Counted from the first letter of the whole stretch, positions 60,236-62,759 are shown. The stretch is DNA of 63,889 nucleotides, filler included, from Octopus bimaculoides (GCF_001194135.2; 6 parts of 6 records of this genome joined end to end with filler, not necessarily neighbours in it), one strand, 5' to 3'. Notes: generated from the letters alone by a model not told the origin. Numbers and translations: made by a program.

Positions 60236-60786
60236 ACGTGCTTCATAACGTTTGGAACTGAAATACGTATTGAACTCACTCCCCAATACAATATTATCTC
60301 TCGTAACTCTCTGCCATAAAAATGTTGGAAACTTAGTATTTTTTCAGATATTAATAAAATTTGTCGAACCTGTTTTCATGTTGTCGGCCGTCGGAGCTAT
60401 GGAAACTTAGCGCACTGCGATTGCATGAAAATAGATTCGACTAATTTTATTATAACCATAAAAAATACTAGATTTCAAACATCTCTTTGGTTACATACGT
60501 TCAGAGCAATTCCAAACCATAAAAATCGCATTTTAAAATAGTGTTTAGCGACAGTGGTGAAATTTCCCTTCAAACTACGAACAAGAGTTTAGATATGTAC
60601 CAGCTACTACAAATAATTGATTGTACGAAAAGTAAGGCCCTACGTACATCAAATTGTCTTTATATTAAGTGGCTGCAGAAGAATTNNNNNNNNNNNNNNN
60701 NNNNNNNNNNNNNNNNNNNNNNNNNNNNNTTAATTAATTAANNNNNNNNNNNNNNNNNNNNNNNNNNNNNNNNNNNNNNNNNNNNT

Positions 60787-61524
60787 AAATTACGAGATTC
60801 ACTGGAACTTGCTAGATCACGAGGTGTACCAAAACGACAGCGCCCTCACTTCACCACACAACCACATAGTTCACGATATGTATCAGAACATCACCACGAT
60901 GTAATACCATCTCCCACGTACGTATCTGCACTGAGTGTTGACAGACAACCGCCACAATATGTATCAGACTATTACATGAATGTAGAGCCATCTGAATCCA
61001 AGCAAGACAGTTCACGTTCACGGCAATATAGTAAATTACGAGATTCACTGGAACTTGCTAGATCACGAGGGGTACCAAAACATCAGCGCTCTCACTCCAT
61101 TCCACAACCACAAAGTTCGCGATATGTATCAGAATATCACCACGATGTAATACCATCAAGCACACACTTAGCTGCAATGGAAGTTGATAGACAACCTCCA
61201 CGATATGTATCAGACTATCAAATGAATGTAGAGCCATTGGAACCACCACATAGTCCAAGATATGTATCAGACTATCACATGAATATAGAGCCACTTGAAC
61301 CACCACATAGTCCACGATATGTATCAGATTTTCACATGAATATAGAGCCACTTGAACCACTACATAGTCCACGATATGTATCAGATTTTCACATGAATAT
61401 AGAGCCACTTGAACCACCACATAGTCCACGATATGTATCAGACTATCACATGAATATAGAGCCACTTGAACCACCACATAGTCCACGATATGTATCAGAT
61501 TTTCACATGAATATAGAGCCACTT
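60787..61524 (+). CDS. Candidate exon of an unknown tandem-repeat protein (82-aa units, then 19-aa PRYVSD[Y/F]HMNIEPLEPPHS units); partial at both ends
   Basis: The frame is open for all 246 codons between two gaps. Unit lengths are 246 and 57 bp, both multiples of 3, with no indels or stops between diverged copies. Several silent changes occur among the 57-bp units (GAC/GAT, CGA/AGA, TTG/CTT). Confidence 0.55.
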
Positions 61525-62759
61525 NNNNNNNNNNNNNNNNNNNNNNNNNNNNNNNNNNNNNNNNNNNNNNNNNNNNNNNNNNNNNNNNNNNNNNNNNNNN
61601 NNNNNNNNNNNNNNNNNNNNNNNNNNNNNNNNNNNNNNNNNNNNNNNNNNNNNNNNNNNNNNNNNNNNNNNNNNNNNNNNNNNNNNNNNNNNNNNNNNNN
61701 NNNNNNNNNNNNNNNNNNNNNNNNNNNNNNNNNNNNNNNNNNNNNNNNNNNNNNNNNNNNNNNNNNNNNNNNNNNNNNNNNNNNNNNNNNNNNNNNNNNN
61801 NNNNNNNNNNNNNNNNNNNNNNNNNNNNNNNNNNNNNNNNNNNNNNNNNNNNNNNNNNNNNNNNNNNNNNNNNNNNNNNNNNNNNNNNNNNNNNNNNNNN
61901 NNNNNNNNNNNNCATCATTTCATCCTCGTCGCAGTTCGGAATTTAAACCATGGAGGGCCTGAGCACTTGAAATTCTGTGAGCCCCTCATACACGAGAATT
62001 AAAGTTATGGAAATATAGAAAATTAATATCTCAAAACCCATCAATTGAATGTAATTGGATTTGATGTGTTAACAGAGAAATTTTAAATAAATGACTGAAA
62101 ATGTCGCTTTACAATTCAATTCTTTTCCTCACACTTTCACTTGCAGTGTTCATTTTCATCTTCATTGTGGAAAGTACAATGGAGGAGGGAAGAAGGGGAT
62201 AGATAACGATAAAATGACAGAAAATTACAAAAAAAGGAAAAGAAAAATATACCATTTTAGTGGTTGTTGCTGTTCCAAAGCCATGATGAGAGTGTGTGTG
62301 TGTGAGTGGGTGGGTGGGCGGAGAGACATAGATTTGAAAGACATGAATTTTAATACATTTTGTTTTAAATAAGTTTCCCTTCATTGTTTTGCTATCAAGA
62401 TAAAGGGAAAATTTTCACAAAAATGTGGAAATTTCAACATGTATGGGACAGCTATTCCAAAAGCCTGCTTTCTCTGTCTCCAGTAAGGGTGGTCGGGTAC
62501 AATGAATAATAGTGACTGCACTTTTGACTTTGAGGTAAAAAGTAGTTTTACAAATGTTCACTACCTAACAAAAACTGCATAAGCTAAGCAAATGACATTC
62601 TCTAAATGAATCAAAAATACCATAACATTCAGAATGCTATTTCACAAAATTATCTCTGCNNNNNNNNNNNNNNNNNNNNNNNNNNNNNNNNNNNNNNNNN
62701 NNNTTAATTAATTAANNNNNNNNNNNNNNNNNNNNNNNNNNNNNNNNNNNNNNNNNNNN

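What the first reader, a model, noticed from the sequence alone, without database searches (positions are those of the whole stretch)
60787..61962. Candidate unknown repeat protein with a two-tier (82-aa over 19-aa) architecture
Seen: the contig between gaps is one stop-free plus-strand frame of 246 codons. It has an 82-aa unit (KLRDSLELARSRGVPK...RYVSE.HHDVIP...VDRQPP.YVSDY.MNVEP) twice, the second copy truncated, followed by at least 5 copies of a 19-aa unit (PRYVSD[YF]HMNIEPLEPPHS) derived from the end of the long unit. The (R)YVS[DE] core also recurs twice inside the long unit. The diverged 82-aa copies differ at about 27 nt with no indel or stop (6 silent, about 21 replacement changes, so roughly neutral and not proof of selection). 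The 57-bp units show silent or conservative changes (GAC/GAT, CGA/AGA, TTG/CTT, Y/F, V/I). The frame may close after the next gap, and an AATAAA lies at 62086. Inference: an exon of a lineage-specific Pro/His/Tyr/Ser-rich, probably disordered repeat protein. I recognise no family.
Basis: partly seen in the sequence, partly recalled or inferred. Interest (0 to 1): 0.75.

Follow-up and report, generated by a model that had tools for sequence, protein, structure and literature searches.

The report
Octopus-only repeat protein gene, 3' part
This stretch is the repeat-rich end of a gene from a small, fast-evolving family found only in octopuses; it very likely encodes a floppy repeat protein of unknown function, so it is real but fairly ordinary for a lineage-specific gene.

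Summary
There is a 246-codon open + frame (60787-61524). It contains a 246-bp (82-aa) unit x1.8 and a 57-bp (19-aa) unit x5.8 derived from the long unit's end.

It is not an orphan. A profile of the 82-aa unit finds five proteins among 1.84 billion, and full-length and N-terminal searches add a few more. All named hits are Octopus proteins (O. vulgaris CAI9723199.1, O. sinensis LOC118763368 and XP_036359032.1, O. bimaculoides LOC106872223), and none has a known function.

In O. vulgaris and O. sinensis these are single-exon genes in tandem clusters. Each has a conserved N-terminal region of about 320 aa, a hypervariable repeat core whose periods are all multiples of 3, a basic C-terminal tail and a conserved 3' flank.

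The DNA right of the gap matches that tail (SFHPRRSS), and downstream it matches the 3' flank, including the AATAAA. Both sides of the gap are therefore parts of such a gene, in the right order and orientation.

Reading frames are kept across species, but amino-acid sequence is weakly constrained (omega 0.5-0.9 in the N-terminal region, at or above 1 in the repeats). AlphaFold predicts disorder with one short helix per long unit.

Verdict: a new member of an annotated but uncharacterised Octopus repeat-protein family, carrying its own 19-aa expansion. Function is unknown.

The parts
60787..61032 (+). Long unit 1 (82 codons): KLRDSLELARSRG predicted-helix segment, then a Pro/His/Ser/Tyr-rich linker with an RYVSEHHH box, YVSA, a PPQY at 60949-60960, and YVSDYYMNVEP.
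   Evidence: profile domain 1, positions 1-82, score 149.7
61033..61254 (+). Long unit 2 (74 codons, same register). Its helix segment is 61033-61071 and its PPRY is at 61195-61206. Its last 19 codons are the first 57-bp unit.
   Evidence: AlphaFold helix at residues 82-93.
61198..61524 (+). 57-bp (19-aa) array PRYVSD[YF]HMN[VI]EPLEP[PL]HS. Five full units start at 61198, 61255, 61312, 61369 and 61426. A sixth (61483-61524) is cut by the gap.
61525..61912 (.). Assembly gap (388 N, length only estimated). By homology it should hide more 57-bp units plus about 56 codons of unique tail (SY.HRDSLERN...NRAGRRIF.K.ATKLRDKV.SIFGKKR.WAPD).
   Evidence: P0004 shows the array-to-tail junction. Inference; not tested with reads.
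61913..61962 (+). Last codons of the CDS: xSFHPRRSS, then EFKPWRA and stop (61960-61962). Positions 61915-61937 are 100% identical to the O. vulgaris P0003 gene (L001 12320-12342).
61937..61939 (+). Junction of a net 78-nt deletion relative to all O. vulgaris and O. sinensis paralogues. It removes their last 16 codons, the stop and 28 nt of 3' flank. It lies 25 nt from the gap edge, so it could be an assembly error.
61963..62659 (+). 3' flank (probable 3' UTR and beyond), homologous to the 3' flanks of three O. vulgaris paralogues: 91% and 88% to the two matching blocks of the P0006 flank, 79-80% to the other two.
62086..62091 (+). AATAAA, conserved with its context (TTTTAAATAAATGACT) in every relative aligned.

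Best explanation
The stretch is the 3' part of the coding sequence of a gene from an Octopus-restricted, tandemly duplicated, single-exon gene family. Named members are O. vulgaris CAI9723199.1, O. sinensis LOC118763368 and O. bimaculoides LOC106872223. The nearest relative is the 643-aa O. vulgaris paralogue P0006.

Shown:
- The 82-aa module is shared with these proteins.
- The DNA right of the gap is the family's C-terminal tail and 3' flank.
- The family's reading frames are maintained across paralogues and species.

How the architecture arises (inferred): the repeat core behaves as a coding minisatellite. An ancestral 82-aa module was duplicated in tandem (246 bp). That module is a short helix (LRDSLELARSRG) followed by a disordered Pro/His/Ser/Tyr linker carrying RYVS[DE]YH boxes and a PPxY. 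Its last 19 aa were then amplified as a young 57-bp array, which probably caused the assembly gap. Every period seen in the family (57, 81, 162, 246 bp by TRF; about 90 bp read from the protein repeats) is a multiple of 3, so slippage or unequal crossing-over changes copy number without breaking the frame.

What the protein does (inference, low confidence, about 0.2): it is an intracellular, largely disordered protein with no signal peptide or membrane span. It would act through many copies of short Tyr-containing linear motifs, as a multivalent scaffold or adaptor. Motif number would be tuned by repeat gain and loss.
For: Homology:
- The 82-aa profile finds only 5 proteins among 1.84 billion. 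The two with source names are Octopus; the other three are unnamed UniParc entries.
- Full-length and N-terminal searches add only Octopus proteins and one octopod-like Logan contig.

Gene structure in relatives:
- P0003 is one exon.
- Four paralogues lie within 28 kb in O. vulgaris. Four syntenic intact ORFs lie in O. sinensis.

The window against O. vulgaris:
- The repeats are 77-81% identical to the P0006 gene.
- The post-gap piece is 100% identical over SFHPRRSS, then 79-91% identical to the 3' flanks, with AATAAA conserved.

Coding evidence:
- Only the + frame is open in the relatives' repeat cores: 478 and 323 codons, against 15-49 stops in each other frame.
- Indels in the best window-O. 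vulgaris alignment keep the frame (two of 3 nt, plus a compensating 2-nt pair). Indels in the P0011-P0012 protein alignment are whole codons.
- Random substitution at the observed level leaves an ORF intact in 0.02% of trials for the P0011/P0012 orthologues. It never did so for the N-terminal region, and did so in 1.6% of trials for the window's two long units.
- Omega is 0.54-0.86 in the N-terminal region and 0.64 between orthologues.

Repeat periods: TRF gives 57 and 246 bp here, and 81 and 162 bp in O. vulgaris.

Disorder: mean pLDDT is 50 for the window protein and 38 for P0006. Helices appear only at LRDSLELA-type segments and in the basic tail. The highest 19-residue hydropathy is at most 0.6 in six of seven members, so no membrane span. 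The seventh reaches 1.18 at the end of a gene model that looks truncated.
Against: - The one Logan relative looks like genomic DNA: its contig starts in a (TA)n run and includes about 540 bp upstream.
- Amino-acid constraint in the repeats is absent or reversed. Omega is 1.6-6.9 against O. vulgaris (small counts, best uncorrected Fisher p = 0.0014) and 0.77 between the two internal units. A decaying copy would give a similar picture.
- The window copy lacks the family's last 16 codons.
- Its N-terminal part is not in the piece, so an intact full-length ORF is not shown.
- The PPxY is missing in the closest O. vulgaris paralogue, which weakens the motif hypothesis.
- The AlphaFold alignments were shallow (7-8 sequences), so low pLDDT is weak evidence for disorder.
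Confidence: 0.72

Rival explanations
1. The window copy is a dying or already dead paralogue. It would be a recently duplicated family member whose frame is still open only because too little time has passed, with a runaway 57-bp expansion and a broken C-terminus.
For: - Omega is at or above 1 in the repeats.
- A net 78-nt deletion removes the conserved C-terminal 16 codons and the stop.
- The 57-bp units are 94% identical, so they are very young.
- The chance of two long units staying open is only moderately small, 1.6%.
- The N-terminal part is unseen.
Against: - 246 codons are open with no frame-breaking indel against relatives that are 19-23% diverged at the DNA level.
- The frame still ends after 7 more codons, upstream of the conserved AATAAA.
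- Another family protein, P0002, also has a shortened tail.
- All other copies examined in two species are intact.
Confidence: 0.15
2. The scaffold is mis-joined. The repeat contig (60786-61524) and the tail/3' flank contig (61913-62659) would come from two different paralogues of the cluster, or from collapsed copies. In that case neither the gap nor the apparent frame closure describes one gene.
For: - In O. vulgaris and O. sinensis the paralogues lie a few kb apart in both orientations, with 79-91% similar 3' flanks. That is the kind of locus short-read scaffolding gets wrong.
- The piece is bounded by gaps on both sides.
- The unnamed fragments P0001 and P0004 look like gene models called on similar small contigs.
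Against: - The order and orientation of the two contigs are exactly those of a single family gene.
- On the available matches both contigs are closest to the same O. vulgaris paralogue, P0006: the highest-scoring repeat alignments (77-81%) and the closest flank (91%).
Confidence: 0.1
3. It is a non-coding minisatellite or a fragment of a transposable element, and its open frame is an accident of unit composition.
For: - A repeated unit without a stop automatically gives a long open frame. The antisense frame is also nearly open.
- The copies within the window evolve about neutrally.
Against: - The unit occurs only inside long ORFs of one clustered gene family. It gives 5 hits among 1.84 billion proteins, not the hundreds expected for a transposable-element ORF.
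- There is no transposase, reverse transcriptase or integrase domain and no Rfam match.
- In the relatives only this frame stays open over 323-478 codons.
- The diverged P0002 unit keeps the motifs at 49-54% identity with an in-frame 8-aa insert.
Confidence: 0.03

Closest known systems
O. vulgaris hypothetical proteins P0006 (643 aa; L001:4572-6503 -) and CAI9723199.1 / A0AA36F3L0 (P0003, 798 aa), with their O. sinensis orthologues inside LOC118763368
   Same: - The same 82-aa module (LRDSLELA..., QPH.SRYVSEYHH, RRPPRYVSDYH.NVEP).
- The same reading frame.
- The same C-terminal SFHP(RRSS).
- The same 3' flank with AATAAA.
   Different: - The relatives carry one full 82-aa module, then 54-aa (162 bp) and 27-aa (81 bp) repeats.
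- The window has at least 1.9 long modules and a 19-aa array of at least 5.8 copies that no relative has.
- The window lacks their last 16 codons.
O. sinensis XP_036359032.1 ('serine/arginine repetitive matrix protein 2-like', P0005) and O. bimaculoides XP_014774617.1 (LOC106872223, P0009)
   Same: The same family by the N-terminal region. They share the RLRDSLELA(A)RSRG[IV]P segment that opens the window's long unit.
   Different: - Their repeat is a 30-aa unit without the RYVSDY boxes.
- P0005 continues with RS/SP-rich and WDPDTSRWSRDF repeats.
- The SRRM2-like name reflects composition only; there is no SRRM2 domain.
Coding minisatellites in taxonomically restricted, disordered repeat proteins in general (from general knowledge: mucins, involucrin, many reproductive and immune repeat proteins)
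   Same: - Periods are multiples of 3.
- Unit type and number turn over quickly between close species (798 versus 771 aa between the sister species).
- Amino-acid constraint is weak while the frame is maintained.
   Different: - There is no signal peptide, so it is not a secreted mucin-like protein.
- There is no sequence relationship to any of those families.

Membership tests
Octopus-restricted uncharacterised family (CAI9723199.1 / LOC118763368 / LOC106872223) | 82-aa module with LRDSLELA helix segment and RYVS[DE]YH / PPRYVSDY..NVEP boxes | tested here: met
   Profile hits: P0003 at 4.5e-61 with 10 stretches, P0001 at 1.1e-72, P0002 at 8.8e-51. Window domains score 149.7 and 134.0.
Octopus-restricted uncharacterised family (CAI9723199.1 / LOC118763368 / LOC106872223) | Conserved N-terminal region of about 320 aa (MNT.E...ADHSQYPD...CEVADDK...NNNSA) | not testable with these tools
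   The piece starts inside the repeats at 60786, and only N lies upstream. The region is present in all full-length relatives.
Octopus-restricted uncharacterised family (CAI9723199.1 / LOC118763368 / LOC106872223) | Basic C-terminal tail ending ...WAPD.SFHP...AVLKTFKRIN, followed by a conserved 3' flank with AATAAA | tested here: inconclusive
   SFHPRRSS and about 700 bp of flank are present. Most of the tail lies in the gap, and the last 16 codons are deleted in the window.
Octopus-restricted uncharacterised family (CAI9723199.1 / LOC118763368 / LOC106872223) | Single uninterrupted coding exon, with a frame kept open through the repeats | tested here: met
   246 codons are open. The relatives are single-exon.
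SRRM2 (the name RefSeq gives to a relative) | cwf21 domain and long RS-dipeptide tracts | tested here: not met
   No Pfam domain in the window protein or in P0005. The window protein is only 10.6% K+R and its translation shows no RS-dipeptide tract.
CCDC85 (Pfam PF10226, faint precomputed hit on P0003) | A match to the CCDC85 coiled-coil profile above threshold over a real stretch | tested here: not met
   P0003 scores 24.7 bits against a cut-off of 23.8, but no single stretch passes. The score sums over the O. vulgaris-specific 54-aa repeat. The window protein, P0006 and the others have no hit.
Transposable-element ORF | A transposase, reverse transcriptase or integrase domain, and many dispersed copies | tested here: not met
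   No such domain. Only 5 proteins match among 1.84 billion. The copies sit in two tandem clusters on one chromosome.
WW-domain ligands (PPxY-motif proteins); asks whether it works like one, not whether it is a sequence-family member | A conserved PPxY in a disordered context | tested here: inconclusive
   PPQY and PPRY occur once per long unit here, and also in P0001-P0004 and P0007. They are absent in P0006, P0008 and the 19-aa units. Binding was not tested.

The most novel reading that the evidence does not exclude
The family could be an octopus innovation under diversifying selection. It would be a CRE-driven set of tandem genes (a TGACGTCA lies about 80 bp upstream of the family's MNT... 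start in all 8 relatives checked). Their disordered repeat cores would be arrays of Tyr/PPxY linear motifs. Motif number would be re-tuned in each species and paralogue by in-frame slippage, for example as scaffolds in neurons or germ cells. The window's 19-aa array would then be an adaptive, species-specific increase in valency rather than drift.
Probability: 0.1. Interest if true: 0.6.

Novelty: new member of a known kind. Interest (0 to 1): 0.3.

Why it matters
Cephalopod genomes contain many lineage-restricted genes whose roles are unknown. This family is small and tractable: it has a clear genomic arrangement, a conserved promoter element in its relatives, and repeat cores that differ between sister species. 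That makes it a workable case for studying how new disordered proteins arise and change by in-frame repeat turnover.

For annotation, the result has three consequences:
- The gap-bounded ORF should be annotated as part of this family, not as an orphan.
- The O. sinensis model LOC118763368 probably fuses several paralogues.
- The gap most likely hides more repeats plus about 56 codons of tail.

It does not open or settle any long-standing question.

Tried and rejected
- **Reads across the gap and RNA evidence:** The look-up of sequencing runs and read laying were both closed, so nothing was obtained.
- **Exact look-ups of P0001 and P0002:** not on record.
- **Rfam on both strands:** no match.
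- **Pfam:** only sub-threshold noise for the window protein (Membrane_bind, PA_Ig-like) and for the relatives.
- **PDB sequence searches with the family and unit profiles:** nothing credible. The single hit was a glutathione S-transferase at E = 0.024.
- **Fold search:** not run, because both models have a mean pLDDT below 50 and would give meaningless matches.
- **Literature:** no paper holds the motifs, accessions or LOC ids. The one keyword hit was an unrelated metallothionein paper.
- **Antisense coding:** the 286-aa '-' ORF is rejected. It is produced by the N run plus a unit that lacks stops in that frame, and in the O. vulgaris relatives every frame other than the + coding frame has 15-49 stops.
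- **Intron after SFHPRRSS:** I considered a splice donor there to explain the divergence from P0003. I rejected it because the downstream bases align to the relatives' 3' flank, which indicates a deletion and not an intron.

Full report
**1. Observation**

The piece is 60786-62659. From 60787 the + frame is open for 246 codons up to the gap at 61525.

TRF reports two arrays:
- a 246-bp period x1.8 (60786-61237, 86% matches, no indels);
- a 57-bp period x5.8 (61197-61524, 94% matches, no indels).

The first 57-bp unit (61198-61254) is the end of long unit 2, and the end of long unit 1 (60952-61008) is its diverged counterpart. The two-tier description is therefore correct.

The two long units differ at 38 nt in 26 codons over 222 nt, 6 silent and 20 replacement.

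A shuffled long unit lacks a stop in a given frame in about 1% of trials. Because the array multiplies one unit, the open frame alone is only suggestive. The long '-' ORF listed comes from the N run and a unit without stops in that frame.

**2. The gap**

Homology provides an indirect answer.
- The bases right of the gap read xSFHPRRSS in the frame that the nominal gap length happens to preserve.
- 61915-61937 is 100% identical to the end of the O. vulgaris P0003 gene (L001 12320-12342).
- 61939-62659 aligns over about 720 bp to the 3' flanks of three O. vulgaris paralogues. Identity is 91% and 88% for the two blocks of the P0006 flank and 79-80% for the others.

Both sides are therefore parts of a gene of this family, in the right order and orientation.

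In the relatives, about 56 codons separate the last EP-ending unit from SFHP: SYPHRDSLERNASNV...NRAGRRIFTKVATKLRDKVRSIFGKKRIWAPDA. The fragment P0004 shows such an array-to-tail junction: MNIEPLEAPHSPRYVSEYHH...NVEPSYSHRDSLERNTSNV. The gap must therefore hide at least about 170 nt of unique coding sequence plus an unknown number of 57-bp units.

The near-identical array is the likely cause of the gap. A mis-join between neighbouring paralogues cannot be excluded.

**3. What it is**

The 246-aa translation finds two unnamed UniParc proteins. P0001 is 75% identical and has the same 82-aa unit. P0002 is diverged.

A profile of the 82-aa unit, scored against all 1.84 billion cluster representatives, finds five proteins: P0001, P0002, P0004, and two named ones:
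- P0003 = Octopus vulgaris CAI9723199.1 (798 aa);
- P0005 = Octopus sinensis XP_036359032.1 (1134 aa, named 'SRRM2-like').

Searches with P0003 and with an N-terminal profile add the following:
- four O. vulgaris proteins (P0006, P0008, P0010, P0011);
- O. sinensis LOC118763368 (P0007);
- O. bimaculoides LOC106872223 (P0009);
- a distant subfamily (P0013, P0014);
- one protein from four Logan assemblies of an unidentified, octopod-like organism (P0012).

Nothing outside Octopus-like genomes was found.

**4. Family anatomy**

P0003 is a single exon (L001 10001-12397). Four paralogues lie within 28 kb of O. vulgaris chromosome OX597818.1 (93.918-93.946 Mb; P0008 +, a 597-aa gene +, P0003 -, P0006 +). 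Two more lie at 51.59-51.61 Mb.

O. sinensis has the same four ORFs in synteny, all intact (432, 597, 771 and 643 aa). The RefSeq model LOC118763368 spans 31-40 kb across them, so it is probably chimeric.

Each protein has three parts:
- a conserved, highly charged N-terminal region of about 320 aa;
- a repeat core that differs in every paralogue: 162-bp and 81-bp periods in O. vulgaris by TRF, 30-aa units in P0005 and P0009, and longer units in P0010;
- in the cluster nearest the window, a basic tail RRIFKKAATKLRDKV.SIFGKKRTWAPD.SFHP...AVLKTFKRIN.

The window's long unit corresponds to the single full 82-aa module of P0003, P0006 and the 597-aa gene. No relative has the 19-aa tandem array, although O. 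sinensis P0007 has three diverged 18-19-aa units. The window's array is a lineage-specific expansion.

**5. Is it coding?**

Evidence that the frame is maintained:
- In the O. vulgaris repeat cores only the + frame is open, for 478 and 323 codons. Every other frame has 15-49 stops.
- Indels in the best window-O. vulgaris alignment keep the frame. Those in the P0011-P0012 protein alignment are whole codons.
- The diverged P0002 unit keeps the motifs at 49-54% identity, with an in-frame 8-aa insert.
- Random substitutions at the observed level leave the ORF intact in 0.02% of trials for P0011 against its orthologue P0012. They never did so for the N-terminal region between the two clusters.

The frame is therefore maintained by selection across the family. 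For the window's own two long units the figure is 1.6%, which is weaker support.

Constraint on the amino-acid sequence is weak:
- Nei-Gojobori omega is 0.54-0.86 for the N-terminal region among paralogues (dS up to 0.55).
- It is 0.64 for the orthologue pair.
- It is about 1.0-1.7 for the repeat cores among O. vulgaris paralogues.
- The window's long units against O. vulgaris or O. sinensis units give omega 1.6-6.9. Counts are small, and the best Fisher p of 0.0014 is uncorrected and the best of several non-independent tests.

I read this as no purifying selection on most repeat residues, with a possible excess of replacements. It is not proof of positive selection.

The repeats (77-81% identity) are more diverged than the 3' flank (91%) against the same paralogue. 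This fits unit turnover, fast protein evolution, or both.

**6. Structure**

AlphaFold2 with shallow family alignments gave these results:
- Window protein: mean pLDDT 49.6, pTM 0.12. The only helix is at residues 82-93, which is KLRDSLELARSR.
- P0006: mean pLDDT 38.3. Helices appear only at LRDSLELA-type segments and at the C-terminal RRIFTKVATKLRDKVRSIFGKK.

In six of seven members no 19-residue window has hydropathy above 0.6, and mean hydropathy is about -1. That means no signal peptide or membrane span. P0009 reaches 1.18 at the end of a gene model that looks truncated.

The protein is most likely intracellular and largely disordered. The shallow alignments make this a weak test.

**7. 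Mechanism proposed**

*Shown:* the window is a part of a family gene, and the periods are multiples of 3.

*Inferred:* the core evolves as a coding minisatellite by slippage or unequal crossing-over. It gains and loses whole modules or sub-modules in frame. One example is 798 versus 771 aa between the sister species.

*Inferred with low confidence:* the conserved elements are short motifs, namely the amphipathic helix, QPH.SRYVSEYHH and RRPPRYVSDYH.NVEP, the last of which includes a PPxY. The protein would then act as a multivalent motif scaffold. However, the PPxY is absent from the closest O. vulgaris paralogue and from the 19-aa units.

**8. Comparison with known families**

There is no Pfam, PDB or Rfam relationship. 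The 'SRRM2-like' name and the faint CCDC85 hit are compositional or repeat-summed artefacts.

It behaves like other taxonomically restricted repeat proteins with coding minisatellites. As for membership, it belongs only to the unnamed Octopus family.

**9. Verdict**

The feature is real and very likely coding. It is a new member of an already annotated but uncharacterised family, with its own 19-aa expansion.

Interest is modest. It is useful for annotation and as a case of fast repeat-protein evolution in octopuses, but not surprising to a specialist.

Three things remain open: transcription, the content of the gap, and whether this particular copy is intact.

Noticed in passing
window 61937-61939: A net 78-nt deletion relative to every O. 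vulgaris and O. sinensis paralogue. It joins ...CGCAGTTC to GAATTTAAACC. It removes the last 16 codons (LPKSTDPAVLKTFKRIN), the stop and 28 nt of flank, so the frame runs on for 7 codons (EFKPWRA) into sequence homologous to the relatives' 3' flank. It lies only 25 nt from the gap edge, so it may be an assembly error.
   Followed up: partly
L001, L002, L003, L004, L005: about 80 bp upstream of each family ATG: A full palindromic CRE (TGACGTCA, in the context CATTCATTGRTGACGTCAYAGTTGAA) is conserved upstream of all 8 relatives checked. These span both clusters and O. vulgaris, O. sinensis and the unidentified octopod. The window's own 5' part is missing, so it could not be checked there.
   Followed up: partly
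L009:1303-40951 (O. sinensis CM016863.1 87.76-87.81 Mb): The RefSeq gene LOC118763368 spans 31-40 kb with introns. The region actually holds four separate intact single-exon ORFs, syntenic with the four O. vulgaris genes. The model is probably a fusion of paralogues.
   Followed up: partly
L001:10001-12397 versus L009:24052 (- strand): The P0003 orthologues of the sister species O. vulgaris and O. sinensis differ by 27 codons (798 versus 771 aa). The aligned codons differ at only about 1% of silent sites. This is an in-frame repeat-length change on a very short timescale.
   Followed up: partly
window 62234-62537: This part of the 3' flank is present in two O. vulgaris paralogue flanks but absent from the P0006 flank, which is otherwise the closest. 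The interval includes a short GT/G-rich simple-sequence run at about 62296-62325.
   Followed up: no
window 61058-61918, - strand: A 286-aa '-' ORF is listed by the ORF tool. It is produced by the N run plus a 57-bp unit that has no stop in that antisense frame. In the O. vulgaris relatives every frame other than the + coding frame has 15-49 stops.
   Followed up: yes
P0001 (UniParc UPI00078A2778), not in the window: This 173-aa fragment carries about 2.5 further 82-aa units. It ends in KLRDSLELARS, the same 11 residues that open the window piece. It may be a gene model from the contig just upstream of the left-hand gap, which would mean at least 4-5 long units in this gene. No DNA was available to test this.
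   Followed up: partly
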